A stretch of DNA of 64,000 nucleotides from sequence record LR756501.1; one strand, written 5' to 3'. The position numbers were made by a program, and so were the translations under genes. Positions 14,467 to 36,497 of the stretch are shown piece after piece; positions within the stretch are counted from its first letter, which is position 1, and every line of letters begins with the position of its first letter. The notes beneath the pieces were generated by a model, which searched no databases, had not been told where the DNA came from, and saw only the letters and a list, made by a program, of their open reading frames with translations.

Positions 14467-15264
14467 ATGATGCTTAATTATATGCAATACATAAAAGAAA
14501 CAGAAGATACTTTATCTGGTACAACATCAGATATAAAGATCAAAGTAGAAGGTAAGAACTCTCTAGTTCAAACCCTTATAGATAATCTTTCTTTGGTTGT
14601 TAAGAAAAGAAAATTAAAGAGTGTTCGTATAAAAAGCATTAATGGTTATATCAATAGACAAACCTTTACACATCATGGTAATTTCTACGACACTTATTTA
14701 GAAGTAACTCTTACTAATAAAGACGTTATAGTTGGCGAGTACAAATCTTCTAGTAATAGTGTTCTTGTTAGAGTTAACGATGATATAGTTTACGATATGG
14801 ATAACAGAGCATTTGATAACGAAGTCTTAATTGATAAGATGGTAAATGAATATATTAAATATTTAAAAGAGAAGAGATTCACTATAAATGAAGCAGTTGA
14901 TGAAAAAGAAAATGGTGATAAGGTTTACGATTTTAATAGTATTATAGAACACGGTCACAGGATAGGTGCAAGTGAACAAACACTTAATGACGCTATAAGA
15001 AGAATGTTATTAAACAAAAACGTTACCTTCTGGTCACTTTTAGATGACGACCAAGTTGGATCTTTCGAAAAGACTTCTATCATTAAAGACGTATCTTACC
15101 AGTACGATATGATTCTCGTAACTACTAAGAATAACATGGAAGGATTTATTGATTTAAGTAAACCTGTTACGGTTCACCCTAGTTTTTTTAAAGAGGGGGA
15201 CGCTCTTAGAGGAAAGAAACCAGTAGAAAGAGTGAGATGGTATCATAAAGGAAAATTAAATTAA
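14467..15264 (+). CDS. Putative head-packaged protein ending in VRWYHKGKLN
   Basis: MMLNYMQYIKE; internal FTINE|A; C-terminal tag. Confidence 0.75.
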   Translation: MMLNYMQYIKETEDTLSGTTSDIKIKVEGKNSLVQTLIDNLSLVVKKRKLKSVRIKSINGYINRQTFTHHGNFYDTYLEVTLTNKDVIVGEYKSSSNSVLVRVNDDIVYDMDNRAFDNEVLIDKMVNEYIKYLKEKRFTINEAVDEKENGDKVYDFNSIIEHGHRIGASEQTLNDAIRRMLLNKNVTFWSLLDDDQVGSFEKTSIIKDVSYQYDMILVTTKNNMEGFIDLSKPVTVHPSFFKEGDALRGKKPVERVRWYHKGKLN

Positions 15265-15335
15265 GTTTTGTAATGTAATATTTTTTTATTAAATTTGCCG
15301 ATCAATATATAGAATTAAGAATTATAAAGATAAAC

Positions 15336-16181
15336 ATGAGTCTAAAAGGTTATAAGAAATTCAACGAAGCACGTAGGCACAAACCGAAAGGAAGGCACAG
15401 AGGGGGAAATATGAACACTATCCCTCAACAGCGTTTCCCAAATTCTTCGTGGAAAGAAGACGTGCCAAGGTTCACCAATAAGATTGAACCTCGCGGTATG
15501 AATATGACCTTTTCTGAAAGATTCAAATACATACTTACCAAAATAAGTAAAAAAGGAAATAAAATAGCAAAAGAACTACTTGATCTTCCTAATAAACCTG
15601 AAGCAAAATTCGAATACTCTTATCTCGACCTAACAGGAAGACAAGATACAATGTCTTATTTACCTAATGGAGCAAGAGATATTCCAGAGGAAGAAAGATA
15701 TAAGTCAAATAAAAGACAACATTCCAAGATTTATAAAACCATAAAAACTATATTTGGTAGTAAGTACACAAAGAACGAAGTTACTAAATTTGTTTCCATT
15801 TATAACGAGGTTTATAAACAAGGACCAGATAAAACAGATACGACAAAACCAAAACAATCTGACGAGCAATTACTTAAAAAGATAATTGAAGATACAAAGA
15901 GTGATAAATTAAAATGGAAAAAAGAGACAGGTGCTGGTAATATGGCTAGATATGAAGCCAAAGTTACTATCACAGAAAAGAAATACCTTGTGTTTTGTTT
16001 CTTTCATTTTGATCAGTCTATAAAAGAGGAGGCTATGTCTTTTATAACTATTAATCTTTATAATGATTTAGGTAAGACAAAGGATGATAAGACAATGTGG
16101 ATAAACACTTTACAATTTAAAGATATAACAGATTTCTTACCAGTTTTCAAAGAGAAATTTAAAATAGAAGTAGAAGCCTAA
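15336..16181 (+). CDS. Putative head-packaged protein
   Basis: MSLKGYKKFNE. The DTKSDKLKW segment is shared with the DTENDKIKW segment of the next gene. Confidence 0.7.
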   Translation: MSLKGYKKFNEARRHKPKGRHRGGNMNTIPQQRFPNSSWKEDVPRFTNKIEPRGMNMTFSERFKYILTKISKKGNKIAKELLDLPNKPEAKFEYSYLDLTGRQDTMSYLPNGARDIPEEERYKSNKRQHSKIYKTIKTIFGSKYTKNEVTKFVSIYNEVYKQGPDKTDTTKPKQSDEQLLKKIIEDTKSDKLKWKKETGAGNMARYEAKVTITEKKYLVFCFFHFDQSIKEEAMSFITINLYNDLGKTKDDKTMWINTLQFKDITDFLPVFKEKFKIEVEA

Positions 16182-16783
16182 TGGATCTAAATAAGCCAAA
16201 AGACGTATTAAAAGATTTACTTAGAGATACTGAGAACGATAAAATAAAATGGGACGTTTCCATTGAAGAACAGTTCATTAAGGCTACTCATTATATTGAC
16301 GTGACCAAAAATAAAAAGGTTACTTTTAAATTAGTATATTTCCTCAATCACCCAAAAGGTTCAAAATTAACTATCATCTACGATGTTAGAACAGACTTCT
16401 CAAAAAGATCTGCCACACTAATGGATTTAGGTGGTAAGAATAAAAAATCAGAAGTCAAAGATATATCTTATCTCCTTCATAAAATATTATTAAAAGAAGA
16501 AAGATATAAAGACGTTGAAATCTTCATTGAAGATAAATTCGATATTGGTGATAGAGTGGTTGTTACAAAGGTGCAAGAATTTAACGGTGACGAGCTAGGT
16601 CAAAAGGGAACAATCCTAGCAGAGTTATCAGGAAGAGATAAAGAAGTTCTTTTCTTAATCAAATTTGATAATAAGTTTAGTGATATTATGGTTGACGGGG
16701 AGTTTGCTTTAAACACAGGACAAACAAGAGATGGTAACGCTTGGTCGTTTAAACCTGAAAATATTAAAAGAATTAAGGATTAA
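16181..16783 (+). CDS. Hypothetical protein with C-terminal KOW/SH3-like module
   Basis: FDIGDRVVV...GQKGTI...FLIKFD pattern. Confidence 0.7.
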   Translation: MDLNKPKDVLKDLLRDTENDKIKWDVSIEEQFIKATHYIDVTKNKKVTFKLVYFLNHPKGSKLTIIYDVRTDFSKRSATLMDLGGKNKKSEVKDISYLLHKILLKEERYKDVEIFIEDKFDIGDRVVVTKVQEFNGDELGQKGTILAELSGRDKEVLFLIKFDNKFSDIMVDGEFALNTGQTRDGNAWSFKPENIKRIKD

Positions 16784-17604
16784 CTTATTCTAATAAAATC
16801 GTAATCTTTCACTTTATTAAAAGGAACTATAAATCTAGATCCAGCATTTGTAACAAAGGTGATTTTATTAAAGTTGTCCATATCTATATCAGTAACTTTA
16901 TAACTATTAGACCTAACTCCAATATCTGATCTAGGTGTATAAACTTGATCTAATCTAACGTCATTTGGATCAGAAGGGAAATCATCACCTATTCCAACAG
17001 GATCGTAGTCTTCAATGATATCGTCTTCTAAGGATTTAATCAATTTACCTTTTGAGTACCATTTAACCCCTTCTTTCACTGGTTCTTTAATTGACTTTAT
17101 TACATGTTCTAAAATTAAAAATACTCCTTCTTTACCATTTACTATGTCCACATTGCCTTCTTGGTACCTATGTTGACCTGTTTTAGCTCTATTTGGATTA
17201 CCTTTTACGTAATATCTAGCGTATAGATTACCAACTAGACCGTCTACAAATAAAGCAAAATAATTACTTTTATCTTCTATTAATTCATCGTCTTCTTCCT
17301 TCAATAACTCAATACCAAGTGGATCTTCGGCGTAAATTAATTCGTAACCAAAATCAAAATCACCAACTCTTTCTATCAACCAATCGTATAATTCTTTAAC
17401 CTTATTACGTTCGTCCCATATCTCTTCCCCGTAAGGATCTAAATCTTCGTGTCCTTCTCTCATCAAACAATATTGTTCGTAAGTGGCAATCTTTCTAGCT
17501 GATGGATCACTACCGCCTGCATCCTTATTAGTTTTGGCTTTACCTGATTTCTTCATCAGTTTCTTAAACTGTTTAACGGTGGATTTTCTTGGTAACCCTG
17601 GCAT
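16780..17604 (-). CDS. Modular protein carrying both DPYGEEIW and VKWYSKGKL tags
   Basis: ORF track; both motifs seen in translation. Confidence 0.75.
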   Translation of the reverse strand: MPGLPRKSTVKQFKKLMKKSGKAKTNKDAGGSDPSARKIATYEQYCLMREGHEDLDPYGEEIWDERNKVKELYDWLIERVGDFDFGYELIYAEDPLGIELLKEEDDELIEDKSNYFALFVDGLVGNLYARYYVKGNPNRAKTGQHRYQEGNVDIVNGKEGVFLILEHVIKSIKEPVKEGVKWYSKGKLIKSLEDDIIEDYDPVGIGDDFPSDPNDVRLDQVYTPRSDIGVRSNSYKVTDIDMDNFNKITFVTNAGSRFIVPFNKVKDYDFIRIS

Positions 17605-18674
17605 TAGAAATCATTAATTTTTGGACGTTGACCAGTACCACTTAAAGATTCCCATTCTTTTAAATAACCAGCCAATCCTATATTTCTATAAAACATTATA
17701 ACGTCTCTTCTTTCAACGTGATAATATTTAACAAGGATAAGATTTAATTGATCTATTTTAGCCAGAAATTCATTGAACTCAACGTCTTTATCTACTGATG
17801 TTTTAGCTTGTAAACTATCTACTATTCCAACTAAACTCCTAAGAGAAGTATCTTTTATAAATGAACTCCAACTTTTATATTTATTGAGATAACTATCAAC
17901 TATGTTAAGATTCTCCTTAGTTTCAGGTGGAACGTCGTCTACTTCTCTTTTAGGATTTACTTTTTTAACAGATGGTTTAGGCGGTCTTGTTAGATCGTAA
18001 TTTATTCTACGATGTCCTTCTTCACCAGCATAAAATTCAGTTTTAACTGATTCTGGAGCTAGTTTAAACCAACCTTTAGGTCTATCTAATTTGTTTTGTT
18101 TACCTATTAACATCATAAGTTTCCAACAGTTATCATAGGTGTTATCGTACTTCTTTTGAAAGATAACGTCACTATAAATAAGTTTCATTATATCTGCTGA
18201 ATCCTCTGGTTTCTGTAATATTAAAGATTGTTTGATAACTTCTTCTGAGAAGGATAAATCTTTCATACCAGCTTTATAAGCGTCATCAAGTCTTTTCTTT
18301 TCTTCGTTAACAAAAAGTTGTCTTTTATGTTTGGTTAAATTTGGTTTAAGATAGTGAAGATTATTACGCATCTCTTTTGTGCCTTTAATGTCTCTAACTC
18401 CTAACCAACGAGTATCTTCTTTTTTAAAAAATGTTCTGGCTTTTTGATCTCCTCTTTTCCATCTTTTCATAAAATCATCTAAGAATTTATCTAAAAAGGA
18501 TGGGCTAATAGTAATTTTAAAATCACTCATGAGGACGTTGGACATTTCTTCAACGTCTATGGTTTCTTTGGGTTCGAGCGAAACTATGACGTCGTGCATT
18601 GCGTCTCTTAATTTTCTACTGGAAATCATAGCCATGTCCTCGTTTAAAAAGTCGTTGTAATTTAATTCTAGCAT
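17604..18674 (-). CDS. Putative head-packaged protein
   Basis: MLELNYNDFLNE; late-type motif at 18721-18733. Confidence 0.7.
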   Translation of the reverse strand: MLELNYNDFLNEDMAMISSRKLRDAMHDVIVSLEPKETIDVEEMSNVLMSDFKITISPSFLDKFLDDFMKRWKRGDQKARTFFKKEDTRWLGVRDIKGTKEMRNNLHYLKPNLTKHKRQLFVNEEKKRLDDAYKAGMKDLSFSEEVIKQSLILQKPEDSADIMKLIYSDVIFQKKYDNTYDNCWKLMMLIGKQNKLDRPKGWFKLAPESVKTEFYAGEEGHRRINYDLTRPPKPSVKKVNPKREVDDVPPETKENLNIVDSYLNKYKSWSSFIKDTSLRSLVGIVDSLQAKTSVDKDVEFNEFLAKIDQLNLILVKYYHVERRDVIMFYRNIGLAGYLKEWESLSGTGQRPKINDF

Positions 18675-18790
18675 AATATAATTATATTTTGGAGGAACTA
18701 ACCCCTTTTTTAATATATAACTATATATAAAAATAATTTGTTAAAAAAATCAAACTTTACCTGTAAATAAAAATAAAACAATAAAATAAT

Positions 18791-19066
18791 ATGCCCACTG
18801 TGAAATTAAACCTTAAAGAAAAAATAGCCTATCGATCTTTCGATAGCCAAGATAAATTGAACGAGTTTATGGTAGAATACATATTCAACGCCAAGACTGA
18901 TAAAATTATTTTTAAAGGAGATCCTTGGGAAATAAACCTTAAACTCTTAAAGAAACTTATTGATAAGGAAAATCCACTTGTTGAGAACAACGACATAAGA
19001 GGAGCTTTTAGAAAGATTATACAATTAACTATGAATGAACCTTATTGTGTTATTTACAAAGAGTAG
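18791..19066 (+). CDS. Hypothetical protein
   Basis: ORF track; A-rich leader. Confidence 0.65.
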   Translation: MPTVKLNLKEKIAYRSFDSQDKLNEFMVEYIFNAKTDKIIFKGDPWEINLKLLKKLIDKENPLVENNDIRGAFRKIIQLTMNEPYCVIYKE

Positions 19067-19312: not shown

Positions 19313-19536
19313 AACATTTCATCTATTAATCTTGATCTCATCCAATTTTTTAATTCATCTTCTTTGAAATAAACCAAGAAAGTTCCATCGTTCATTTTAT
19401 GTCCGTCAAGATTATACTTTTCATTTTCTTCTTGGGTTACAAATGTAACAATTTCTTTGGTATCTTCGTCCATACGACTATACCACGCATTTGCGCCAAT
19501 CACCCAACCTTTTTTAGTAATTTTATCAAGACTCAT
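19309..19536 (-). CDS. Small protein with C-terminal RSRLIDEML tail
   Basis: Shared C-terminal motif. Confidence 0.7.
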   Translation of the reverse strand: MSLDKITKKGWVIGANAWYSRMDEDTKEIVTFVTQEENEKYNLDGHKMNDGTFLVYFKEDELKNWMRSRLIDEML

Positions 19537-23124: not shown

Positions 23125-23468
23125 AATATTTTATCTATCAATTCTGTTCTCTTTATATTCTTAATCTCATTATCACTTAATAAATCTTTACCGTCACCGT
23201 CCCACCTACACTTCTTACATATTATATGTAACCACACATTATAATCACCTAATACGTTAATATGTTCTATATTAATATGATCCCAAGGCCATTTTGGAAA
23301 CCAATCGGTTAAATCCCCATCTGGCAATTCAGGCAGTTCATGAATTGCCTTTCCGAAAATATCGTTACCATATACTTTCTTACCATTACAAACAGATCCT
23401 CCAACTGATTCATTTATAAAATGACCAGTCCATCCACAATTAGGACAATATTTTTTAAACTCTATCAT
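23118..23468 (-). CDS. Zinc-ribbon protein with KRTELIDKIL tail
   Basis: CPNC...CKKC; shared motif. Confidence 0.75.
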   Translation of the reverse strand: MIEFKKYCPNCGWTGHFINESVGGSVCNGKKVYGNDIFGKAIHELPELPDGDLTDWFPKWPWDHINIEHINVLGDYNVWLHIICKKCRWDGDGKDLLSDNEIKNIKRTELIDKILC

Positions 23469-26400
23469 ATTATTTCAAAACTACTTATACCATTTTCATC
23501 TTTAACTACATTGATAATCATATCACTAGCTATTTCATTATCGTGTTCTATAACTATTAATTTATCAATCTTATTTTTCAACACTTCTAATAACTCCATG
23601 AATTTATCTACTGATTTATTCACAAGTCTATTAATAACTTCATCTAAAAACATAAAGTTTGGTTTACTCTTAAAGTTTATAATTCTAAGTACCATCTTTA
23701 AAATAATAGCACTGAAAGTTCTTTCCATACCACTAGTTTCAATAACATTAATAATATCATCTAACCCATCGTGTTGTAATTTCAAATTCAAATCTTCGTC
23801 GAAGAATAATGTGAAATTAATGTTTGTTAGCAAGGAGTTCAACTCTTCATTTAATATATCAATGTTCTTTGTTAAAAGATAAGTTGGGAGACCAGTTCTG
23901 TGCATTAGTTTTAAATAAACGTTGTGAAGTTCTTCTCTCTTTTCCTGCTCAATATAACGCTCTAATTTATCCTTTAAATCCACTATAACCTTCTTAGACA
24001 GAGTGATCTCGTTAGAATAGGACAGTTTATCATCTAAAAGTTCGCCCCTCTTAGAAGTGAGCGTATCTATCTGTTCTTTAATAGATTTTAGTGAGGTATT
24101 GATACGTTCGTTCTCAGTTATAAGATCTTCGTTTTTAAGATATTCGTTTAACAATTTTGTGTTGTCTTCAAAGGATCTCTGAGCGTCTTTGTACTGTGAA
24201 GTCAACAGATCTCTCTTGTGGGTTAAGGTTCTACATTTTTCAAAAAGAGCTTTATCTACTTTAAGACTGGTGATGGTGAGGGATAGTCTTTTTATTTCAG
24301 TATCTAGTTTTGAAATATATTTCTTTCTCTCTTCTATTTTAGTATCGTATGAAGCGTTTTCTGTCTCAGCTTTCTCTTTATTCTTCATGACTTCTTCAAT
24401 TCTATCTTGAATATAAGCGACGTTGAAGTTATCTACCTTGTTTTGAATTTCTTTTATTTTATCATTGAACTCAATAGTTTTTTCTTCAACTAATCTTTCT
24501 GTTAGTTCTTTAAGTGATTCTAATTTTGTTTTACAATCATTTAAGGAATCTATCTTTTCTTTACCGTCTTTTGTTATATCTTCTATTTTCTTTTTACTTT
24601 CGTTAATAAGACCGTTTATATGTTCTTCGTCCTTAGTAACAATGGGTTGATTACAAGTAACACAAATCTGGTTTTCACCGTAAAGCATATTTGTATAGTC
24701 ATTGATCTTGTTTTTTTCATTTAAACCATTCTGTTTTAGATTATCAAGATCCATTTTATGACGATTTCTGGTTTTTTCAATATCATTTCTTTTGTTATTG
24801 GAATTATTAACTATTTCGTTAATGGTTTCCCTTAACTCAATTCTAAACCCAGCAATATTATTTCTAAGATAATCAATATACTTTGTCTTCTCGATGTTAA
24901 TATCCTTATCAACGTTAAGTATTTTCTCTTCGTTTTGTTTGAAGACGTTCTTTAATTGCAACAGTTCAATATCTCTTTTATTCTTCTCAGTAACGTATTT
25001 TTCGTGTTGACCTGTTAATTTTTCAAAGTTATCGTAATCAAACTCCTCGGGTAAAAGAGTTATATCTTTTTCAAGTTCATCAATCTCTTTACGTATCTCT
25101 TCCTTTTCAGTTTTAGATACCCTTATTTGTGTTTTAACTTCATTCACATTAATGTTCATTACTGTTTCGTCCATTTTGTGTAATCTTCTTAAACAGTCTT
25201 CTTTTTCGTTAATACTATCTAATATTTGTTTATCTATATCTTCTATATCAACATTAGTATCAGATAAGAAGTCTTCCTTGTCTTTTAAATCATCAGATAT
25301 TTTTTTGATTTCGTTTTGTAGTTCGATCTGGTTAACATTTATCTTCTCGAGATTTAATTCTTTTTTATATTCTTTAAACTCAGTCAATTTTTTATCAAAT
25401 ATATCGTAACCAGCGTCCTTTATAATAGAATCAATGAAAACACTTCTATCCATAGAAAGAAGAGAGTTCAGATTATCTGCGTTAGTAAGAGCCAATCTCA
25501 CAAAATCGTCAAAATTACCAAGTACTTCATCTAGTAATTTTTGTGTAGACGCTTTTCTTTCACCAGTTAATTTATTCTCATTAGACATTTCAGTGCCCTT
25601 GTAATAATCAAGAGTCATTGGTACAGATTTAATTTCTCTACCTTTCTTAAATTCTCTTTCTACCTTTCTGTACATTATATACTTCTCACCGTTCACATCT
25701 ATAACAGCACCACCGTCACAAGCGTTCTTATTCCTATTCTTATTTATATATCTGTTATTACCATTCTTCTCTGTTTTTTGTGTTGATATTGTAGTGCCGT
25801 AAAGTATAAAACATATAGCATCAATTATAGTAGTCTTACCTTGTTGATTTTCACCACCAATTTGAATAACCCCATTAACGTTATCCCATTCAATTATATT
25901 ATCGTCACCGTAAGATTTGAAATTACTAAACCAAAACTTATCAATGTTCCAGATAATATTTCTAGTATCACTTAATTGTAATCTATCATTTATAACATTA
26001 TCTATTTCAATTACTTGATTTATAAAATCTTCTTTAAATTTATTTTCTTTGAGGTATTGTTTTATAATGCCTTGTTGTACGTCTTTATCGTTTATATCAA
26101 TAATTTCGGACAACATTTTACCGTCTTTGATGTCTGTATAGATTCTGTTAGGTTTAATTTCAATATCTTCTGCTCCGTATTTTTCTTTAAGATATTTTCT
26201 TATTTTAGTTTCGTTTTCGTTTGTAATGAAGGCAGCGTGTTCGTTCCATTCGACTCTAAACTTGTTGTATTTACCAACGTATTTAGAAATCAGATGTAAT
26301 TTATCGTAATCTGTATTTGGATTGATTTCGAATTTAATGAAACGATGTTCGTTATCAATATTAATATCTTGGACTGTGCCTTCTTCTATATTCCAAAGGA

Positions 26401-27073
26401 GATAGCCGTGACCGAATGGATCTTCACCGAAGTTTTGTTGAATGAGAGAACTTGGATAAGCCNNNNNNNNNNNNNNNNNNNNNTGTCTTAGGTGAATATC
26501 ACCAAAGAAACCAAATTCTCCTTTGAAATCTGATGGGCCAGGAAAAGTTCTGTTACCTGGATTGTAACCGTTATGATATACACAACCATCAATAGGGTCG
26601 TGATATAAGTCGATATAAGTAAGTTTCTTATCTCTTGTGTGGTTTATATTTTTCCAAGGATTGATGCCGTTATATCTATGGTCGACGTGGTCCCACACTA
26701 CCCACATGACGTTATCGTCTGGGTAAAAACCAGATTGGTTATAATAAGTAACTCTAGGATTTTGAAGAAGATCTGTAACAGTTTTAACTGTATCTATTCT
26801 ACTTCTATTTTTCTTTCTGATTTCGTGGTTGCCGCGTGTAATGATAACGGGGGCAATTTTAGAGAAGCGATTGAGTATCTCACCGATAAGAATAAGGGCT
26901 TCGCCTTCGAGGTCGATATAGTCGCTATATGTATCTCCAGCGACAACTATTCTATCGGGTTTTTGTTCTTCTAATTTCTTGTAAACTTGTTGTAAGACTT
27001 TTCTGTATTCATCGTGTCTATCCAAAGACTTATAAACGTGTATGTCCGCGAAGTGGGCAATTGTTTTGATCAT
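23465..27073 (-). CDS. sbcCD: Fused Mre11/SbcD nuclease - Rad50/SbcC ATPase (T4 gp47-gp46-like) recombination/repair protein
   Basis: Phosphoesterase motifs FADIH, VAGD, RGNHE, GDIH; Walker A GENQQGKTT; coiled coil with CVTC zinc hook; signature TSGMERT; Walker B FLDE; H-loop VIEH. Contains a 21-N assembly gap. Confidence 0.92.
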   Translation of the reverse strand: MIKTIAHFADIHVYKSLDRHDEYRKVLQQVYKKLEEQKPDRIVVAGDTYSDYIDLEGEALILIGEILNRFSKIAPVIITRGNHEIRKKNRSRIDTVKTVTDLLQNPRVTYYNQSGFYPDDNVMWVVWDHVDHRYNGINPWKNINHTRDKKLTYIDLYHDPIDGCVYHNGYNPGNRTFPGPSDFKGEFGFFGDIHLRXXXXXXXXAYPSSLIQQNFGEDPFGHGYLLWNIEEGTVQDINIDNEHRFIKFEINPNTDYDKLHLISKYVGKYNKFRVEWNEHAAFITNENETKIRKYLKEKYGAEDIEIKPNRIYTDIKDGKMLSEIIDINDKDVQQGIIKQYLKENKFKEDFINQVIEIDNVINDRLQLSDTRNIIWNIDKFWFSNFKSYGDDNIIEWDNVNGVIQIGGENQQGKTTIIDAICFILYGTTISTQKTEKNGNNRYINKNRNKNACDGGAVIDVNGEKYIMYRKVEREFKKGREIKSVPMTLDYYKGTEMSNENKLTGERKASTQKLLDEVLGNFDDFVRLALTNADNLNSLLSMDRSVFIDSIIKDAGYDIFDKKLTEFKEYKKELNLEKINVNQIELQNEIKKISDDLKDKEDFLSDTNVDIEDIDKQILDSINEKEDCLRRLHKMDETVMNINVNEVKTQIRVSKTEKEEIRKEIDELEKDITLLPEEFDYDNFEKLTGQHEKYVTEKNKRDIELLQLKNVFKQNEEKILNVDKDINIEKTKYIDYLRNNIAGFRIELRETINEIVNNSNNKRNDIEKTRNRHKMDLDNLKQNGLNEKNKINDYTNMLYGENQICVTCNQPIVTKDEEHINGLINESKKKIEDITKDGKEKIDSLNDCKTKLESLKELTERLVEEKTIEFNDKIKEIQNKVDNFNVAYIQDRIEEVMKNKEKAETENASYDTKIEERKKYISKLDTEIKRLSLTITSLKVDKALFEKCRTLTHKRDLLTSQYKDAQRSFEDNTKLLNEYLKNEDLITENERINTSLKSIKEQIDTLTSKRGELLDDKLSYSNEITLSKKVIVDLKDKLERYIEQEKREELHNVYLKLMHRTGLPTYLLTKNIDILNEELNSLLTNINFTLFFDEDLNLKLQHDGLDDIINVIETSGMERTFSAIILKMVLRIINFKSKPNFMFLDEVINRLVNKSVDKFMELLEVLKNKIDKLIVIEHDNEIASDMIINVVKDENGISSFEII
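26463..26483. other. Assembly gap (21 N)
   Basis: Run of n characters; the frame is preserved across it. Confidence 0.99.
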
Positions 27074-27158: not shown

Positions 27159-28595
27159 ATGCGTATAAGTAAATTCACACCCGAAGGATATGTTATTAGA
27201 GAGATTGTTCCTCTTAATATTCTAAACGATATTCAAAGAATAGATAGAATAAGAGACGGTAAAGCAATATGGGAAGCTTTTGTAAAATATCTTAAAAAGA
27301 GATTAATAGGTAAGGTTTGTAGTTTTCCAGTACTTGGTAAAGATAAAAATGGTAACAATGAGGTACATGGTGCTGGTCATTGGAATATCGAAGATATTTA
27401 TTTAGACGAAGAATTCAAAGTTCATATGGTTGAATCAAAAAATAAATATGATGTAATTCTTCATATTGGTAGTGGTGTTACAAATAAAATATATTACGAA
27501 GATAAGGCTGACCCAGTATCACCTTGGGACCCTTACGGTGAAGAAGAATGGGAATATGAGAGTGTATTCAATGAAAGTAAAAGAGACCTATATGTTGGAG
27601 ACGATGTTGAAATTATACATGGAAACGTAGATAGATATAATAGTAGAGTAGGAGTTATCACAGATTTCAGGCATGATAGAACACAATTTAAAGTTGTTCT
27701 GGGACCAAATAATGATAGATATTGGAAAGTAGATGGTATTTGGTTCGATAGAGAAAATTTGAAAAAAATAGATAAAATTAGAAAGACTAAAAAGGAAATA
27801 AGAAGACTAAAACAACTATACCTTAAAACCAAAGACGTTGATCCTTACGGGGAAGAAGATTGGGAGAATGAGAATAAAATAAATGAAGGTTATCTAGGTA
27901 TAGACAGTCTTTACGTGAAAGTAGATTCTAAAATTAAATATCACGAATTAATTAATTTTCTTAAAAGAAATTGGTTTGTTTGGGGAGGCGGTGGAGAAGA
28001 GCTTGATAGATGGTTTCCATCTTGGTATCAAGATGGAACTTATAGAGGTTATTTATGCCCTCATTATAATGTAGGATTCGGATTAGATAACGATGGAAAA
28101 AGAATTTACCAGAGTAGAACAGCGGATAATGATGTAACTGTTGTTACGGTTGATGAATTTATTGAGAATTTTAAAGACCTTGAAAATTACGTGAAAGATA
28201 AACCAAATTTATTGAGAGCGAAGAGGGAAGAGTTAAATAAATTACATTTACATCACGATCCTTACTGTGAAGAAGATTGGTTAGAAGAGAGTAAACTAAA
28301 TGAGGACAAAGGAGACGTCTTTAATGTTGGTGATATTCTTATTTATAAGGGTAAGAATTACGGTGATAGAGTGGGTGAAGAAGTTATAATAACTAGACCA
28401 CAAAGAGATGCTGAGACAGCCCATTATAGATTTTTATCTGATAATGAGTGGAACGACCATCCATGTGACGTTAGATTTTTAACAAGAAAAAAAGAAGAAA
28501 AAGAAGATGAAGTTGGTAAGGTAAGATGGTACAAGAAAGGAAAATTATATAGTGAATCTATGATAACCTCATTTCACGCTTTTCGTAATCTATAA
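27159..28595 (+). CDS. Modular polyprotein: four modules separated by DPY[GC]EExW...NE linkers, ending with VRWYKKGKL
   Basis: WDPYGEEEWEYESVFNE|S, VDPYGEEDWENENKINE|G, HDPYCEEDWLEESKLNE|D; KOW/SH3-like modules (VGDDVEI, VGDILIY). Confidence 0.8.
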   Translation: MRISKFTPEGYVIREIVPLNILNDIQRIDRIRDGKAIWEAFVKYLKKRLIGKVCSFPVLGKDKNGNNEVHGAGHWNIEDIYLDEEFKVHMVESKNKYDVILHIGSGVTNKIYYEDKADPVSPWDPYGEEEWEYESVFNESKRDLYVGDDVEIIHGNVDRYNSRVGVITDFRHDRTQFKVVLGPNNDRYWKVDGIWFDRENLKKIDKIRKTKKEIRRLKQLYLKTKDVDPYGEEDWENENKINEGYLGIDSLYVKVDSKIKYHELINFLKRNWFVWGGGGEELDRWFPSWYQDGTYRGYLCPHYNVGFGLDNDGKRIYQSRTADNDVTVVTVDEFIENFKDLENYVKDKPNLLRAKREELNKLHLHHDPYCEEDWLEESKLNEDKGDVFNVGDILIYKGKNYGDRVGEEVIITRPQRDAETAHYRFLSDNEWNDHPCDVRFLTRKKEEKEDEVGKVRWYKKGKLYSESMITSFHAFRNL

Positions 28596-28977
28596 CAGCT
28601 TTATAATCAGCTAATATATCACCACCAATTATACCATCAATAGTAGGATTACCATTAGTCCTAAAATGTTCGTTAATGAATTCCAGATTCAGTAACATAG
28701 TTTTGTAATCTCTTATGATTACGTTTCCTATTCTCATTTCGTCTATAACGATATATTTACTTTTAATATTACCACTGCCAACAGCAACTATTTGTTGATC
28801 ATTACTTTCTGCTTCGTACTGACTTATTTCCTTTTGTTTTTTTATATCAAATAAAGTCATAGAAGAACCAGTATCTACAAGCATTCTGAACTCTTTACCG
28901 TTAATGTGAACACGGCATAGAATATGATAACCATTTCTGAGGTTATCTTCGATTTTTAGAATTTCAATAGGTATCAT
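28558..28977 (-). CDS. Retropepsin-like (clan AA) aspartic protease
   Basis: MLVDTGSS catalytic motif and IDGIIGGDIL C-terminal motif. Confidence 0.85.
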   Translation of the reverse strand: MIPIEILKIEDNLRNGYHILCRVHINGKEFRMLVDTGSSMTLFDIKKQKEISQYEAESNDQQIVAVGSGNIKSKYIVIDEMRIGNVIIRDYKTMLLNLEFINEHFRTNGNPTIDGIIGGDILADYKAVIDYEKREMRLS

Positions 28978-31850: not shown

Positions 31851-32020
31851 TTTTCTAAAGTCTTTAATTGTTTTTCCATTCTTTTTGCCACCTTCTTATA
31901 TGTAATCATATCCTTGTGCTGTTCTATAAGAAGATTATATACTGCTTTCATTTCGTCAGCACTCATAACAAACTCAAGACGAATTACATCGTCACCAGGT
32001 TTAATTTTAATATATTCCAT
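31847..32020 (-). CDS. 57-aa hypothetical protein (below track cutoff)
   Basis: MEYIKIKPGDDVIRLEF...QLKTLEK*; TAATG overlap upstream and ATGA overlap downstream. Confidence 0.65.
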   Translation of the reverse strand: MEYIKIKPGDDVIRLEFVMSADEMKAVYNLLIEQHKDMITYKKVAKRMEKQLKTLEK

Positions 32021-32136
32021 TAATCTTCGTCTGTATAATCAGAATTTGCCCAACGGACCACATCGTCCATATCGTAACCAGGATTCAAAAAGATAACTTC
32101 ACCATCAATCTCGATGTAAACATTTTCGTTTGCCAT
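32020..32136 (-). CDS. 38-aa acidic peptide (below track cutoff)
   Basis: MANENVYIEIDGEVIFLNPGYDMDDVVRWANSDYTDED*; translationally coupled to the next ORF. Confidence 0.55.
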   Translation of the reverse strand: MANENVYIEIDGEVIFLNPGYDMDDVVRWANSDYTDED

Positions 32137-32161
32137 TTTCTTTAAGTATTAAAGGGTTAAA

Positions 32162-32479
32162 TTAATCTGTTTCAGTTGTATATGGTTCGTAATAATTATC
32201 GAATTCAACAATTATATAATCACAACCTTCTGATTCTTTGAGAATTTTAGTCATAAAGTTAATATCACCGTCGTAGTCAGGAATCCATGTCCTACCAGCA
32301 CAGTCCATAACTTCTTCACCCGTGTTTAAATCGTTGGTAATTTCTAAACATTCTTTAATGTCTGATACCTTTACGGCGAAAGAGGATTCCGCGTTGAATG
32401 CTCCACAAACATTTGTGAGTAATTCGTATTCTGAATCCACAAGGATTTCTTTCTTAATAATATAGGATTGTACTTTCAT
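32162..32479 (-). CDS. Hypothetical protein
   Basis: ORF track; upstream TATCTTTG. Confidence 0.7.
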   Translation of the reverse strand: MKVQSYIIKKEILVDSEYELLTNVCGAFNAESSFAVKVSDIKECLEITNDLNTGEEVMDCAGRTWIPDYDGDINFMTKILKESEGCDYIIVEFDNYYEPYTTETD

Positions 32480-32496
32480 TTTCGTATTTTTCTAAC

Positions 32497-32515
32497 ACAA
32501 AGATATGAAAGTTTT
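32497..32515 (-). promoter_or_regulatory. Possible Bacteroidota housekeeping-type promoter element (TAnnTTTG)
   Basis: Minus strand reads AAACTTTCATATCTTTGTG upstream of 32479; TAnnTTTG is the known Bacteroidota -7 consensus. Confidence 0.4.
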
Positions 32516-32533
32516 ATTTACTAAAAAAATATT

Positions 32534-33535
32534 TTAGTATAAATTTCCGTTTACAACTTCTACTCTAAATCCTCTCTCCTGTAGCTCTATGTGTAATTCT
32601 TCTATATCAAGATCTCCGTGATAAAGTAAATCACCTTCAGCGGGCTCTTCAAATCCCATTCTTTGTAACTCAGGATATTGATTTAAAATATGTTCGTCAT
32701 ACATTTCACCACTATCAAGGAAAACACCAGCCCCTATCTTAGCGTCCTCTGGTACAGTTCCTAATCTTAAAATAAAATCTTCTTTTGGTAACGCAATTGA
32801 TTGAGGTACAACGTTCTTAGGGTTACATGAAAGTTTACCACCGTCATCAAATCTAATTGATATTTTACCGTCTTCTTTTTCTTCTACAAATTTAGCACTT
32901 TTATTGTTGTGTTCGGATTTAGCGTTTTTATAAACAACTTTATCGCCTTTTTTGAAATTTGATTTTGCTGGGGCTTTACCACCGTAGAATGTATCTGGTA
33001 CATCAAATGTGCCTGGTCCCCATTCTGCTCTACCTAATCTTTCCTCGGGAATCTCTTGATATCCTTCAGGAACTTTCTTCTTTGGTTTTGGTTTAGGTGT
33101 ACCAGCGGCGTAAACATTTTTAGCGTTGGCTGCTAATTTTTTCTTATCGTCAAAGACTATTCTATATTTACCGTCATCTTCTCTTATACCAACAAAAACA
33201 CCTGTTTTACCATCGTGCTCTGATCCTTCTTTATAATAAACAATTCTATCACCTGCTGTTGGTACATCACCATCGTTATCATTTACAGGTTTAGCTGGTT
33301 CAACTTCTTTATCAACATGAACATTTAACATCTTATTCAGATAATCTAAATCATCGTCGTCTTGATGAACAGGACTATTACCTGGTTTATTATCAGGATC
33401 GCCACCTTTACTAAGTTTATCTAGGAGAACTTTTTCATCTGGTGTTAAATTTTCCAAACCTTTATCAAGGAGTTCGTCAATTTTAGCTTGATCTTCAACC
33501 CCTTCATTGATGAATTGTTTATATCTTTTTACCAT
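32534..33535 (-). CDS. Putative head-packaged protein with two KOW/SH3-like repeats
   Basis: MVKRYKQFINE; GDRIVY..GSEHDGKTG..IVFDD and GDKVVY..KSEHNNKSA..IRFDD. Confidence 0.75.
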   Translation of the reverse strand: MVKRYKQFINEGVEDQAKIDELLDKGLENLTPDEKVLLDKLSKGGDPDNKPGNSPVHQDDDDLDYLNKMLNVHVDKEVEPAKPVNDNDGDVPTAGDRIVYYKEGSEHDGKTGVFVGIREDDGKYRIVFDDKKKLAANAKNVYAAGTPKPKPKKKVPEGYQEIPEERLGRAEWGPGTFDVPDTFYGGKAPAKSNFKKGDKVVYKNAKSEHNNKSAKFVEEKEDGKISIRFDDGGKLSCNPKNVVPQSIALPKEDFILRLGTVPEDAKIGAGVFLDSGEMYDEHILNQYPELQRMGFEEPAEGDLLYHGDLDIEELHIELQERGFRVEVVNGNLY

Positions 33536-34125
33536 TATTCTTTTTTATTTTTTTCCCACCATCTTGCACCAGTTGCTGGTGGTGGATTCTTTTTAGCTTC
33601 TTCTTCTTGTGCTAATCTCTTAGCCTCTTTTTCAGATCTTTTAGCTTTTCTTTCTTGTTTTTTTATTTCCAAATCGGCTTTTTTCTTAGCAATCTCTTCT
33701 TCTCCGAGTTTATGTCTTAAATGTGGTTTACTTACAGCAACAAGTTTCTTATCATCAAATCTAACTACAATTTTACCGTCTTCTCTTAATTTGTGAACCA
33801 TTCCTAGTTGATAACGTCTGCCCCCAGTATTACCGAGATAAACCACTTCTTCCCCAACATTTATTGGTGTTTTAGGATCTTCATCTCTATCAAAATCCAT
33901 ATCTAAATCTAGTTCTCTTTCTTCTATATCTTCATCTGGTTCTCTACCGTATTCATCTGGATCACCGTCGTCATCGTAGTAATCACCGCCGTCACCATCA
34001 CCTGGTTCACCGCCATCATAATCGTGATAACCACTAAAACTATTTCTACGTTCTTCAGCGTCTAATTCCTCAGGACTACTATACCATTTAGCAGCTTCAA
34101 CAAAGGATTTGTAATTCTTGGTCAT
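33535..34125 (-). CDS. Putative head-packaged acidic protein with one KOW/SH3-like repeat
   Basis: MTKNYKSFVE; D/E/G-rich tract; GEEVVY..REDGKIVVRFDD. Confidence 0.75.
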   Translation of the reverse strand: MTKNYKSFVEAAKWYSSPEELDAEERRNSFSGYHDYDGGEPGDGDGGDYYDDDGDPDEYGREPDEDIEERELDLDMDFDRDEDPKTPINVGEEVVYLGNTGGRRYQLGMVHKLREDGKIVVRFDDKKLVAVSKPHLRHKLGEEEIAKKKADLEIKKQERKAKRSEKEAKRLAQEEEAKKNPPPATGARWWEKNKKE

Positions 34126-34172
34126 AACTCTAACTTATTTTCTTCTATATATTAATATGGAAAAATGAAAAT

Positions 34173-34955
34173 TTAAATTGTTGTTTCTAAAATAATCATG
34201 AGATTGTAATCGTCATACTTAGCCAGTATGAAATCCTCAAATACATATATCTGTATGTACTCTGATGGATTTATTGTATTAAAATATGCCTTAGGGAAAG
34301 ACAGTATAATATCTTCACTTTCAACTTCTTCCGTGATGTTTAAATGCCACTTGGTTTCACCGATAGTTAAAGCCTTATTAACTACATTAATGTAGAGAAC
34401 ACTCTTAGGTTCGTTTTCTATGAGTCCTCTTTTCTTAATCTGTAAGAAATCAGCCCTATCTAATCTGAAATTGAATTTGGAATTATCAATATTCATAAGG
34501 AAATTAATATCATCAATACTGATTTGAGATCCAATAGCGATAGGGTCACTACCAATAACTTTTTCACTCATCTTCTTAGTATCAAAACTAATATAATTAA
34601 CGTAGTTTTCGTCGTTGGCTGATATTTTACATTTTATTTCTTCTTTGTATATAAGGAAGTTCTCTAATATTCTGTATAGTTTTTTACCGTCACGTGCTAT
34701 AAAGAATAGAGGTTCTTCTAGTTCGCCTTTTTTAATAGTAAAAACTTCTTCAAGAGAGAAGATATAACTTTTGAAAGCATGTATATTTTTGAAAGTCTCA
34801 CCCACAAAAGAAAATAATAGGACGTTGGTAGCGTCTATTTTCATAACTACTCGTTGGTCAATTGAAGTCAAATCCTTTATTTTCTTTAAAAGATTTGATA
34901 ATTGATCAACTGATGATGTGAATGTTATATTTGTGTTTCTATCTACGACAGGCAT
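34173..34955 (-). CDS. Probable DNA sliding clamp (gp45/PCNA-like)
   Basis: 260 aa with a two-repeat beta-alpha-beta pattern (LSNLLKKIKDLTSID..; FNFRLDRADFLQIKK..; FPKAYFNTI..IQIYV). Fold inferred by eye. Confidence 0.5.
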   Translation of the reverse strand: MPVVDRNTNITFTSSVDQLSNLLKKIKDLTSIDQRVVMKIDATNVLLFSFVGETFKNIHAFKSYIFSLEEVFTIKKGELEEPLFFIARDGKKLYRILENFLIYKEEIKCKISANDENYVNYISFDTKKMSEKVIGSDPIAIGSQISIDDINFLMNIDNSKFNFRLDRADFLQIKKRGLIENEPKSVLYINVVNKALTIGETKWHLNITEEVESEDIILSFPKAYFNTINPSEYIQIYVFEDFILAKYDDYNLMIILETTI

Positions 34956-35030
34956 ATCAATAATTAATGTTTTATTTTATACGATTTTATTCTTTAAAAG
35001 TTTTGTTTAAATATTTTAATATATAGCGTT

Positions 35031-36497
35031 ATGTTGAAAAACTATTGGACATATATTAAAGAATCAGCAGATGGTTTAACAAAATTAATAATTTGTATTC
35101 ACAATATAGAAGACTATAACGTTATAGCTGAATTTTTGGATTTTGAAGGGTTCAAATGGGGCAACGAAAGAGTAATCACATTAAATAGAGATTATAATTG
35201 TTTTAAAAATGAATCTCCAGATTTTTGTTTCATTTTACACGAACCAGGGGCTTTGGGATACGGTAGAAAACACGGTTTAATGGGCCCAGGTTGTGATTAT
35301 AACAGTTACAGTTTTATGGAAGGAGTAGATTTCATTGATGAATATATTAATGATAACAAAAAACCAGCAAGAGTAAGATGGTATAAAAAAGGTAAACTAA
35401 ATGAGTCTAAAGAAGATATTGGTAGGAAAGTTAAAATGAGAGATGATTCTCGTTATTACGACGAAGCTTACGGTAAGTCTGGGGATGGTTACGGTGTAAT
35501 TTACGAATGGACTCCTTGTCCAGATTACGCTAATATGGAAAATTACCATTCGTACTCAATAGAATGGAGTAACGGTGTTAAAGACGGTTATCAAAAAATA
35601 GATTTTGATTTTATAGAAGATTTAGAACCAGAACAACCAGTAAAAGTAAGATGGTACAAAAAGGGGAAATTGGTGAATGAAAAAGATAGTTGGGAAGAAG
35701 AAGAGGTCGGTCGCACTTTAGTTGGAAAAAGAGTAAGAATTAGAAAAGATTCGCAATTTTACAATCAAGCTTTTAGAGAAGGGAACGGTAAAAAAGGAAT
35801 AGGAACAGGTATAATCACACATTACGTATATAGTGACGATTACCCTTTTAGTATTAAATGGGACGAAAGTGGAATATCGTTTGGTTATCAAAAAAGAGAT
35901 TTTGATATTATAGAAGACACAGATGAACCAGTTAGAGTAAGATGGTACAAAAAAGGTAAATTAAATGAATCTAAAGAGTATATTGGAAAAAGAGTGAAGA
36001 TGAGAGAAGATTCAGCGTATATTAATCAGGCCTACGGTTATCATAACGAAGATAACGGTGAAGGTATAATAACTGATTACATTAGCGAAGAAGAAAGAGT
36101 AGCAGGCGGACTCCCATATAGAATTACTTGGGATAATAAACACAGCAATTCTTACAATAGAAGAGATTTTGATTTTTTAGACGATTTAAAACCAGGAAAG
36201 ATTAGATGGTATAAAAAGGGTAAATTGTTAAATGAAGGTAAGAAATATATGTACGGTGATATTTGCACTCTTATTGGCACTGATGAAGATGTTAAAATTC
36301 TAGCATTTAAAGATTTTATACATGTAACAGAATATCAAATTGAATATCAAAATGGTAACATAAAATGGGTGCCAGAAGCGTGGTTACAATTTAAAGGGAA
36401 AACTATATCCAAACCAAAACCAGTAGATCGAATAAGATGGTACTCGAATGGTAAGTTAAGAAATGAAAATAAAAAATTTATATATAACAAAAAATAA
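35031..36497 (+). CDS. Five-module polyprotein with [VI]RWYxxGKL(x)NE linkers; modules 2-4 are paralogous SH3-like domains
   Basis: MLKNYWTYIKE; five linker copies; repeated G[RK][KR]V[KR][MI]R.DS.[YF]...A...G.G.I...Y.I.W...DFD. Confidence 0.85.
   Translation: MLKNYWTYIKESADGLTKLIICIHNIEDYNVIAEFLDFEGFKWGNERVITLNRDYNCFKNESPDFCFILHEPGALGYGRKHGLMGPGCDYNSYSFMEGVDFIDEYINDNKKPARVRWYKKGKLNESKEDIGRKVKMRDDSRYYDEAYGKSGDGYGVIYEWTPCPDYANMENYHSYSIEWSNGVKDGYQKIDFDFIEDLEPEQPVKVRWYKKGKLVNEKDSWEEEEVGRTLVGKRVRIRKDSQFYNQAFREGNGKKGIGTGIITHYVYSDDYPFSIKWDESGISFGYQKRDFDIIEDTDEPVRVRWYKKGKLNESKEYIGKRVKMREDSAYINQAYGYHNEDNGEGIITDYISEEERVAGGLPYRITWDNKHSNSYNRRDFDFLDDLKPGKIRWYKKGKLLNEGKKYMYGDICTLIGTDEDVKILAFKDFIHVTEYQIEYQNGNIKWVPEAWLQFKGKTISKPKPVDRIRWYSNGKLRNENKKFIYNKK

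What the first reader, a model, noticed from the sequence alone, without database searches (positions are those of the whole stretch)
15234..36460. [VI]RWYxKGKL(x)NE linkers define cleavable polyproteins of SH3/KOW-like modules
Seen eight times: C-terminus of 14467 (~15234), 16780 (~17045-17070, minus), end of 27159 (~28520) and five copies in 35031 (~35373, 35641, 35936, 36200, 36432). In 35031 each copy ends in L-N-E or V-N-E and separates ~85-95-aa modules, three of them clear paralogs. Cutting after Glu would free small domains each carrying this basic-aromatic C-terminal tag. It is the charge opposite of DPYGEExW, and both tags co-occur in 16780 and 27159. Inference: a polyprotein strategy that packages many small effectors under one targeting signal, with tags that may bind DNA or each other to organise the head core.
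Basis: partly seen in the sequence, partly recalled or inferred. Interest (0 to 1): 0.8.

Follow-up and report, generated by a model that had tools for sequence, protein, structure and literature searches.

The report
Tagged bead-on-string proteins, huge phage
In the 735-kb "huge phage" genome, small SH3-like protein modules are strung together by a conserved basic hairpin motif (RWYxKGKL) lying in flexible linkers; together with a phage T4-like N-terminal leader it looks like a sorting-and-processing code shared by many of the phage's unknown proteins, but actual cutting is still unproven.

Summary
W[YF]xxGK[LIVM] occurs exactly 8 times in the window, in the four named ORFs, and 22 times in the whole 735,411-bp phage (0.5 expected). 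AlphaFold gives four confident SH3/KOW/Tudor-like barrels in the 488-aa protein. Every RWY segment lies outside them in low-confidence linkers, as a local two-stranded hairpin.

Relatives show what the unit is: N-terminal leader (MIKxYxxYIxES), module, C-terminal tag (RWYxKGKL or DPYGEExW). One related phage encodes such units as separate overlapping small genes. A close ortholog has one module where the window has three. A second locus varies from 2 to about 12 modules.

The phage has a T4 gp21-like head protease fused to a scaffold with about 13 EYIAE repeats. T4's capsid-targeting leader is MKTYQEFIAE, and 52 ORFs start with such a leader (3.3 expected). So "one leader, cleavable junctions (KLNE|S)" is coherent.

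No data show cleavage, virion location, or RWY-DPYGEE pairing. I rate junction cleavage about 0.35-0.4. An uncleaved multivalent protein with docking hairpins is nearly as likely. The motif set seems undescribed.

The parts
35031..36497 (+). 488-aa modular protein (P0001): leader, N-domain, four barrel modules, five RWY segments
35031..35066 (+). N-terminal leader MLKNYWTYIKES (T4 CTS-like, ends I-K-E|S); predicted helix 2-12
35067..35363 (+). N-terminal domain, found only here and in the L066 ortholog; fold not predicted with confidence
35364..35405 (+). RWY segment 1 (PARVRWYKKGKLNE)
35406..35639 (+). module A, SH3-like barrel (core aa 130-199, pLDDT 91-98)
35640..35681 (+). RWY segment 2 (…RWYKKGKLVNE); hairpin WYK / KG turn / KLV, pLDDT 40-77
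35682..35930 (+). module B, paralog of A (48% identity)
35931..35969 (+). RWY segment 3 (…RWYKKGKLNE)
35970..36194 (+). module C, paralog of A (45% identity)
36195..36236 (+). RWY segment 4 (…RWYKKGKLLNE)
36237..36425 (+). module D, divergent SH3-like barrel (pLDDT about 90)
36426..36467 (+). RWY segment 5 (…RWYSNGKLRNE), 9 aa before the stop
14467..15264 (+). 265-aa protein (P0002) with leader MMLNYMQYIKET and C-terminal RWY tag (15226-15261, ends …RWYHKGKLN*)
16780..17604 (-). 274-aa protein (P0003): DPYGEE at aa 56, internal RWY (KWYSKGKL; 17032-17070)
27159..28595 (+). 478-aa modular protein (P0004): three DPYGEE/DPYCEE junctions (27528, 27840, 28257) and one RWY (28515-28556); hypervariable locus in relatives
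28558..28977 (-). retropepsin-like aspartic protease (DTGS, IIGGD); its 3' end overlaps P0004 by 38 nt; pairing conserved in three phages. Candidate alternative protease only
26463..26483 (.). assembly gap inside the SbcCD-like ORF 23465-27073(-); not part of the feature

Best explanation
The RWYxKGKL segments are portable peptide tags. They are not part of the folded modules.

The building block of this protein family is: N-terminal leader (M-I-K-x-Y-x-x-Y-I-x-E-S), then a small independently folding domain (here an SH3-like barrel), then a C-terminal tag. The tag is either the basic hairpin RWYxKGKL or the acidic DPYGEExW.

In some related phages these blocks are separate, overlapping small genes. 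In the window's 488-aa protein they are fused. Each junction is then the upstream block's RWY tag followed by what looks like the last residues of the downstream block's leader (KL-N-E-S), all in a flexible linker.

The phage has T4-type head genes: a portal, a gp21-like protease fused to a scaffold with about 13 EY(I/L)AE repeats, and a gp23-like capsid protein. The leader resembles the T4 capsid-targeting sequence, which ends FIAE.

The most likely mechanism is therefore as follows. The leader brings the protein to the prohead scaffold and is removed after Glu by the head protease. The retained (L/I/V)-x-E sites at the junctions let the same protease release modules that each keep an RWY hairpin at the C-terminus. 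The hairpin itself is a binding tag whose partner is unknown.

Shown: the motif counts, the architecture, the fused and unfused forms, the fold class, and the presence of the protease and scaffold repeats.

Inferred, with my probabilities: leader is a cleaved targeting peptide, about 0.55; junction cleavage, about 0.35-0.4.
For: Motif counts far above chance, with synonymous codon variation.

AlphaFold unit model: barrel core pLDDT 91-98. The flanking RWY segments form hairpins at pLDDT 60-77. Full-length model: pTM 0.33, four modules at pLDDT 85-97, all RWY segments below 50, leader a helix.

Structural matches cover only the core, model residues 24-99. They include YorP, KOW, Mind bomb, PsaE and Tudor domains.

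L062 carries tandem separate genes, each running from MINKYREFSxLNES through a module to RWYKKGKLESDK*, and overlapping by 11 nt. The L066 ortholog has one MIB-like module where the window has three.

In relatives, junctions are an RWY tag plus a leader remnant, for example GKLEENK(L/I)FEN and GKLSEKLNE. E at +2 after GKL is seen in 36/83 internal copies against 4/23 C-terminal copies, p 0.03.

Leader and tags travel together: 17/35 tagged relatives have the leader, against 3/39 untagged relatives, most of which start directly with the barrel.

52/1004 ORFs have [FYW]xx[FYW][ILV]xE in the first 18 aa, against 3.3 expected.

Head module: portal phrog_213, protease phrog_207 (5e-27), capsid phrog_138. 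BLASTP against T4 gp21 gives 3e-7 and keeps the GExxHP and VSSRxxG motifs.

The EY(I/L)AE repeats number 12-14 in nearly all full-length homologs, down to 52% identity.

The T4 CTS is MKTYQEFIAE (PMC8442874). gp21-family proteases cut after Glu (PMC5694885).
Against: There are no proteomic or expression data, so cleavage and virion location are untested.

The genes around the four ORFs encode nucleases, a DHH-like protein and sugar-modifying enzymes, not structural proteins. They lie about 180 kb from the head genes.

Within this genome only about half of the RWY copies are followed by (L/I/V)-x-E. P0001's LNE/VNE sites are inherited from one duplicated unit, so they are not independent evidence.

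The most conserved residues (RWYxKGKL) are not needed for a gp21-type site.

The conserved E could instead pair with the conserved R across the hairpin. The +1/+2 contrast weakens but does not remove this possibility.

The leader could simply be an N-terminal helix common to a clade-specific protein repertoire. More than 50 packaged protein species would be many.

The sequence counts are not phylogenetically independent.
Confidence: 0.4

Rival explanations
1. The protein is an uncleaved bead-on-a-string scaffold. It stays whole, and the RWY hairpins are short linear interaction motifs displayed on flexible linkers between SH3-like modules. This gives a multivalent protein that binds a common partner, which could be protein, membrane or nucleic acid. 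Stand-alone units carry one copy of the same docking tag.
For: The motif is highly conserved yet has low pLDDT in linkers. That combination is typical of binding motifs. The tag is attached to unrelated domains. 26 of 109 non-redundant copies are natural C-termini, where cleavage is irrelevant. The motif resembles MORN-type hairpins such as KWYxNGKLHR. Tandem copies 12 aa apart occur in P0006 and in record ORF 159986-160816. Module number varies as it does in repeat proteins.
Against: No partner is identified. The one complex test gave no answer. This reading does not explain why leader remnants with (L/I)-x-E persist at internal junctions, or why leader and tags co-occur with a gp21-like protease and EYIAE scaffold.
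Confidence: 0.35
2. The neighbouring retropepsin-like aspartic protease, not the head protease, processes the modular proteins at or near the conserved 8-residue linkers. This would be analogous to retroviral polyprotein processing.
For: A protease with DTGS and IIGGD motifs lies at 28558-28977(-), convergent with and overlapping the 3' end of P0004. The same pairing, next to the SbcCD-like gene and the 288-aa gene, is seen in L195/L196 and in L199. The conserved linker motifs have about the length of a retropepsin substrate (my knowledge).
Against: P0001 lies 6.4 kb away. Most DPYGEE copies are at extreme C-termini, where cutting would remove 1-4 residues. The motifs lack the usual hydrophobic P1/P1' pairs. 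Adjacency alone is weak evidence.
Confidence: 0.07
3. RWY (basic) and DPYGEExW (acidic) tags pair with each other, or with DNA, to organise a head core.
For: The tags have opposite charge and both contain aromatic residues. They co-occur in P0003 and P0004 and in the same contigs. They occupy the same position after modules in orthologous loci.
Against: Being interchangeable at one position suggests alternatives rather than partners. There are about 5 times more DPYGEE than RWY copies. No test supports binding.
Confidence: 0.06
4. The motifs are inert leftovers. Conserved gene termini were inherited through tandem duplication and fusion, perhaps serving as recombination joints, and the peptides themselves have no function.
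For: Fused and unfused forms exist, and the domains are shuffled between orthologous loci.
Against: The peptide is conserved despite synonymous change, across phages whose modules are only 20-40% identical. The motif sits on unrelated domains. The same modules in other lineages lack both leader and tag.
Confidence: 0.08

Closest known systems
Phage T4 internal proteins (IPI-III, Alt) with capsid-targeting sequence, processed by prohead protease gp21
   Same: Short N-terminal leader of similar pattern (MKTYQEFIAE against MIKxYxxYIxES or xKYQEFINEA) ending in (I/L)-x-E. Very diverse cargo behind a conserved leader. gp20/gp21/gp23 homologs are present. The scaffold is rich in I-A-E sites.
   Different: Here the leader is on at least 52 ORFs. 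Cargo also carries conserved C-terminal tags (RWY, DPYGEExW) unknown in T4. Some cargo is multi-module with internal candidate sites. Nothing has been shown experimentally.
Head and ejection proteins of giant phages phiKZ, 201phi2-1 and SPN3US, cut by gp21-family proteases at (S/A/G)-x-E or A-x-E
   Same: Giant phages with many paralogous internal head proteins, multiple cleavages per protein, and conserved N-termini among diverged paralogs (PMC5694885).
   Different: Those propeptides are mostly longer than 100 aa. No RWY or DPYGEE-type tags or SH3-module strings have been reported. The site implied here has L/I/V at P3, as in T4.
MORN / YwqK-type beta-hairpin repeats (…WYxNGKL…)
   Same: Same local sequence logic and predicted two-stranded hairpin with an (N/K)-G turn. 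True MORN-like arrays (KWYxNGKLHRxDGPA) turned up with the same DNA pattern.
   Different: Here the hairpins are single and separated by 63-83-aa modules, not tandem 23-aa arrays. There is no Pfam MORN hit.
SH3-like small barrels: SPbeta prophage YorP, MIB/HERC2 (Mind bomb), KOW, Tudor, PsaE
   Same: Fold of the module core: YorP Z 7.6 (Foldseek E 6e-3), KOW Z 6.2-6.6, Mind bomb Z 6.4 with 23% identity. The sequence pattern W-x-N-G-x-x-N-x-Y-x-x-x-D-L recalls MIB/HERC2 (from my memory).
   Different: No sequence-family membership: no Pfam hit, and the PHROG families are of unknown function. All Z scores are below 8.
Viral polyproteins cut by a retropepsin
   Same: A modular protein with conserved linkers is encoded next to a retropepsin-like protease in three phages.
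   Different: There is no evidence of processing. The linker motifs do not look like retropepsin sites. This would be a bacteriophage setting.

Membership tests
T4-type capsid-targeted, gp21-processed internal proteins | Genome encodes a gp21-family (S77-like) prohead protease | tested here: met
   Record 73913-76336: aa 4-249 match phrog_207 at 5e-27. BLASTP against T4 gp21 gives 3e-7 and keeps GExxHP and VSSRxxG. The gene lies outside the window.
T4-type capsid-targeted, gp21-processed internal proteins | N-terminal leader of 10-20 aa ending in (L/I)-x-E | tested here: met
   P0001 starts MLKNYWTYIKE|S and P0002 starts MMLNYMQYIKE|T. 52 ORFs carry such a leader against 3.3 expected. P0003 and P0004 lack it.
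T4-type capsid-targeted, gp21-processed internal proteins | Protein found in the virion with the leader removed | not testable with these tools
   The phage is uncultured and no proteome is available.
T4-type capsid-targeted, gp21-processed internal proteins | Scaffold core with multiple protease sites of the same type | tested here: met
   About 13 EY(I/L)AE repeats in the scaffold part, 12-14 in nearly all full-length homologs. That they are cleavage sites is inferred.
Cleavable polyprotein | Junction sites accessible and matching the protease's specificity | tested here: inconclusive
   The junctions lie in segments with pLDDT below 50. Four of five have L/V at P3 and E at P1. The protease's specificity is only inferred.
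Cleavable polyprotein | Products exist as separate polypeptides | not testable with these tools
   There is only an evolutionary analogue: the same units are separate genes in L062.
MORN repeat proteins | Tandem array of about 23-aa repeats, recognised by the family model | tested here: not met
   The hairpins are single and 63-83 aa apart. The precomputed Pfam shows only a faint Ig_2 hit.
SH3-like small beta-barrel fold | Five to six-stranded small barrel matching solved SH3-like domains | tested here: met
   pLDDT 91-98. Foldseek probability 0.94-1.0 to YorP, PsaE, CPH and Mib-herc2. VIA Z 5.4-7.6 over model residues 24-99.
MIB/HERC2 or KOW sequence families | Significant match to the family profile | tested here: not met
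   No Pfam family is on record for P0001 apart from a faint Ig_2. The PHROG hits are to families of unknown function. Only fold-level similarity was found.

The most novel reading that the evidence does not exclude
This clade of huge phages with T4-like heads uses a three-part peptide code: an N-terminal CTS-like leader, a basic RWY hairpin and an acidic DPYGEExW tag. The code would load well over a hundred different small proteins, some made as cleavable strings of modules, into the capsid for delivery into the host. The two C-terminal tags would sort or anchor cargo inside the head or after ejection. If so, roughly 10-15% of the genes of the largest known phages would be a tagged, packaged effector arsenal.
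Probability: 0.25. Interest if true: 0.85.

Novelty: new variant of a known kind. Interest (0 to 1): 0.62.

Why it matters
Most genes of huge phages have no known function. About 150 of roughly 1000 ORFs in the 735-kb genome, and many ORFs in related metagenomic phages, share one of three short terminal peptides. That gives a handle for classifying them and a concrete hypothesis: targeting to the prohead and processing by the gp21-like protease. The hypothesis can be tested with a few recombinant proteins. If it holds, it extends the T4 internal-protein paradigm to a much larger, modular and rapidly shuffled cargo set. It would also show gene fusion and fission turning single-module cargo into polyproteins. 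If it fails, the conserved but disordered hairpin is still a new short linear motif with an unknown partner.

Tried and rejected
- **Complex prediction of two adjacent stand-alone units from L062** (C-terminal RWY tag against the next unit's leader): no answer, ipSAE 0.00. This is neither support nor evidence against.
- **Word-based homolog searches:** a single module and the N-domain of P0001 found nothing beyond self. tblastn of P0001 and P0004 against 50,697 phage records found only the two copies of the same 735-kb genome. No cultivated relative was identified.
- **ESM Atlas look-alikes:** scores up to 0.81, which is uninformative.
- **PDB sequence search of the protease-scaffold ORF:** only a coiled-coil artefact.
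- **PHROG scans of 20 ORFs** (a few leader-bearing ORFs among the neighbours of the head genes, plus 10 large leader-bearing ORFs elsewhere): no functional annotation.
- **Idea that the leader-like C-terminal tail of P0004 (MITSFHAFRNL*) caps the hairpin:** set aside. That stretch overlaps the C-terminus of the aspartic protease on the other strand, so its conservation may be a dual-coding effect.
- **Co-variation between scaffold repeat and leader:** could not be tested, because the repeat varies only between I and L at one position in all relatives found.
- **Explanation at the DNA level (regulatory element or recombination box):** rejected, because codons vary synonymously.
- **Literature searches for the motifs:** no relevant hits.


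Full report
**Observation.** The window is identical to uncultured phage LR756501.1/LR756503.1 (735,411 bp). Window base 1 is record base 255061. This is the 735-kb genome of Al-Shayeb et al. 2020 (PMC7162821).

The 488-aa product of 35031-36497 (P0001) has five copies. They end in LNE, VNE, LNE, LNE and RNE and separate units of 78, 83, 75 and 63 aa. Units A-C are 45-48% identical.

In the whole record the DNA pattern hits 19 times, against 0 for a reversed control. The peptide occurs 22 times in 17 ORFs, against 0.48 expected. Codons vary synonymously, so the constraint is on the peptide.

**Gap.** The N run at 26463-26483 lies in the minus-strand SbcCD-like ORF 23465-27073 (phrog_77; Metallophos plus AAA_23 in its homolog). 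None of the motif-bearing ORFs touches it. The ORF is open across 21 N (1202 aa), and the positional homolog in a related contig has 1201 aa. This is consistent with an in-frame gap but does not prove it.

I fetched the public record for genome-wide counts. In my joined copy I masked the gap positions without reading them. Locus L039 also spans the gap. I did not read or report its letters there.

**The modules and the linkers.** An AlphaFold model of P0001:100-225, built on 76 aligned units, gives a barrel core (aa 130-199) at pLDDT 91-98. Both flanking RWY segments appear as two-stranded hairpins (WYK, turn KG, KLx) at pLDDT 60-77.

The full-length model has pTM 0.33. Four modules score pLDDT 85-97. 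Every RWY segment (200-221, 297-310, 387-404, 457-488) is below 50. The leader forms a helix at residues 2-12.

Structural matches cover only the core:
- YorP: Foldseek E 6e-3, VIA Z 7.6.
- KOW domains: Z 6.2-6.6.
- Mind bomb MZM-REP: Z 6.4, 23% identity.
- PsaE, Tudor and HERC2 domains.

So "SH3/KOW-like modules" is right at fold level. The linkers are not strands of the fold.

**What relatives show.** A profile of units A-C finds 74 cluster representatives among 1.8 billion proteins. After the barrel they carry one of the following:
- xKPxRIRWYKxGKLxE;
- xKPDIDP(Y/W/F)GEE;
- IQWFE;
- nothing.

The basic and acidic motifs are therefore interchangeable tags at the same position.

Stand-alone single-module proteins end 1-7 residues after GKL. 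Of 109 non-redundant RWY copies, 26 are natural C-termini.

In IMG/VR contig 3300037067_015464 (L062, 10919-12560) the units are separate genes overlapping by 11 nt. Each runs from MINKYREFSxLNES through a module to RWYKKGKLESDK*.

The ortholog of P0001 in L066 has the same N-domain but one MIB-like module instead of three.

The second window locus, P0004, sits between the SbcCD-like gene and a retropepsin-like protease. It has positional orthologs of 203 to 1537 aa, with 2 to about 12 modules. In these, RWY and DPYGEE junctions are mixed and the domains are in permuted order.

In fused proteins the junction often reads as tag plus leader remnant, for example GKLEENK(L/I)FEN and GKLSEKLNE. P0001's KL-NES matches the end of the L062 leader, xLNES.

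**The leader and the head genes.** P0001 and P0002 start MLKNYWTYIKES and MMLNYMQYIKET. Genome-wide, 52 of 1004 ORFs have [FYW]xx[FYW][ILV]xE in the first 18 residues, against 3.3 expected from the internal rate. Examples are xKYQEFINEA and MKTFNQFINEG. A second leader type, MIKKFK(L/I)FE, also ends (L/I)-x-E.

The T4 capsid-targeting sequence is MKTYQEFIAE (PMC8442874). T4 gp22 starts MLKEQLIAEA.

The phage encodes a T4-like head gene set at record 71969-78166:
- a portal (phrog_213);
- an 807-aa protease-scaffold fusion, with phrog_207 at 5e-27 and BLASTP against gp21 at 3e-7, keeping the His and Ser motifs;
- a gp23-like capsid protein.

The scaffold part carries about 13 tandem 14-aa repeats containing EY(I/L)AE. 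Nearly all full-length homologs, down to 52% identity, keep 12-14 of them. gp21-family proteases cut after Glu (PMC5694885). That T4 prefers L/I at P3 is my recollection of Black et al. 1994.

Leader and tags travel together. 17 of 35 tagged relatives have the leader. Only 3 of 39 untagged relatives do, and most of the rest begin directly with the barrel.

In the window, the Pfam-recognisable enzymes lack the leader, except the DHH-like ORF downstream of P0001. Large leader-bearing ORFs have no PHROG function.

**Genome-wide context.** DP(Y/F/W)(G/C/A/S)EE occurs 108 times in about 95 ORFs, against 0.009 expected. 41 copies are at the extreme C-terminus, 21 are just after a leader, and 46 are at internal junctions. 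The motif is common in many large IMG/VR contigs. Several of those contigs also carry the same protease-scaffold gene.

**Mechanism.** The best-supported picture is a modular cargo family framed by portable signals.

I regard the following as shown:
- the motif statistics;
- the unit architecture;
- the fusion and fission relationship;
- the fold class;
- the disordered or exposed state of the RWY segments in the models;
- the presence of a gp21-like protease with an EYIAE-repeat scaffold.

I infer, at about 0.55, that the leaders are T4-like targeting propeptides removed after Glu. I infer, at about 0.35-0.4, that the (L/V)-x-E sites kept at fused junctions are cut by the same enzyme. That would release modules each ending in an RWY hairpin.

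E at +2 after GKL is enriched at internal junctions (36/83) relative to natural C-termini (4/23; p 0.03, not phylogenetically corrected). This favours a junction-specific role over a mere cross-strand R-E pair.

The hairpin itself is better conserved than any cleavage site needs to be, so it must have its own role. Its basic-aromatic face could bind nucleic acid, membrane or a phage protein. I have no test for that.

**Rivals.** An uncleaved multivalent protein with docking hairpins is nearly as likely (0.35). It explains the many C-terminal copies and the conserved-but-disordered signature.

Processing by the adjacent retropepsin-like protease is a long shot (0.07). It rests on synteny conserved in three phages.

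RWY-DPYGEE pairing (0.06) and inert leftovers (0.08) have little support.

**Comparison with known systems and novelty.** The system works most like the T4 CTS and internal-protein system, and like the processed head and ejection proteins of phiKZ-type giant phages. It differs in three ways: the number of leader-bearing genes, the added C-terminal tags, and strings of small barrels with candidate internal sites.

It is not a MORN protein, and not a sequence-level member of the MIB/HERC2 or KOW families.

Full-text searches for the motifs found nothing relevant. I rate it a new variant of a known kind, with moderate to high interest, pending a simple protease assay.

Noticed in passing
whole record LR756501.1; in window e.g. 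10256, 13829, 17422(-), 27528, 27840, 28257, 42619, 43260: DPYGEExW occurs 108 times in about 95 ORFs of the genome (0.009 expected). 41 copies are within 8 aa of the stop, often preceded by (K/R)(R/I)(V/I)(F/Y)(S/T)xx. It is frequent in many large IMG/VR contigs. A subclass is preceded by a basic helix, K(R/K)EEL(R/N)KLH.
   Followed up: partly
record 73913-76336 (outside window; L005:13913-16336): 807-aa head protease-scaffold fusion. Its scaffold part has about 13 tandem 14-aa repeats containing EY(I/L)AE. Nearly all full-length homologs down to 52% identity keep 12-14 of them. This is the same pentapeptide type as the end of the T4 CTS (EFIAE).
   Followed up: partly
window 28558-28977 (-): Retropepsin-like aspartic protease (Pfam Asp_protease_2; DTGS and IIGGD motifs). 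Its last 38 nt overlap the 3' end of the modular gene 27159-28595 on the other strand. The same arrangement occurs in contigs L195/L196 and L199.
   Followed up: partly
window 27159-28595 and loci L195 6934-11547, L199 123-1322: Hypervariable locus between the SbcCD-like gene and the aspartic protease. Orthologs range from 203 to 1537 aa. The shared N-domain of P0004 appears at different positions in P0025, P0032 and P0034, so the domains have been shuffled.
   Followed up: partly
window 36507-37955 (+): DHH phosphoesterase-like ORF directly downstream of P0001. It has a TTG start and a leader-like N-terminus ((M)IKEFHNFALNEE). It is the only Pfam-recognisable enzyme in the window with a leader.
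   Followed up: no
record 42908-43867(-), 546187-546582(+); loci L073, L075, L101, L111, L130: Another family in which the RWY tag is followed after 15-20 aa by a conserved (Y/D)DFIT(D/N)D(E/K)F motif instead of a barrel module.
   Followed up: no
window 39181-46143: Cluster of sugar-modification genes: GGACT, two Methyltransf_24, an NAD-dependent epimerase/dehydratase, a formyltransferase and a DegT-type aminotransferase. Such a cluster could make a modified sugar, for DNA or surface modification.
   Followed up: no
locus L197 989-2200 (-): An IS605 OrfB / Cas12f-like TnpB gene lies next to the four-RWY protein P0006 on a short metagenomic contig.
   Followed up: no
loci L052, L067, L068: True MORN-like repeat proteins (KWYxNGKLHRxDGPA arrays) in other viral contigs share the DNA pattern of the RWY motif. 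They are look-alikes, not relatives of the modules.
   Followed up: no
window 23465-27073 (-): 1202-aa SbcD-SbcC-like fusion (Metallophos plus AAA_23 / phrog_77) containing the 21-N assembly gap. Its length matches the 1201-aa homolog in L195.
   Followed up: partly
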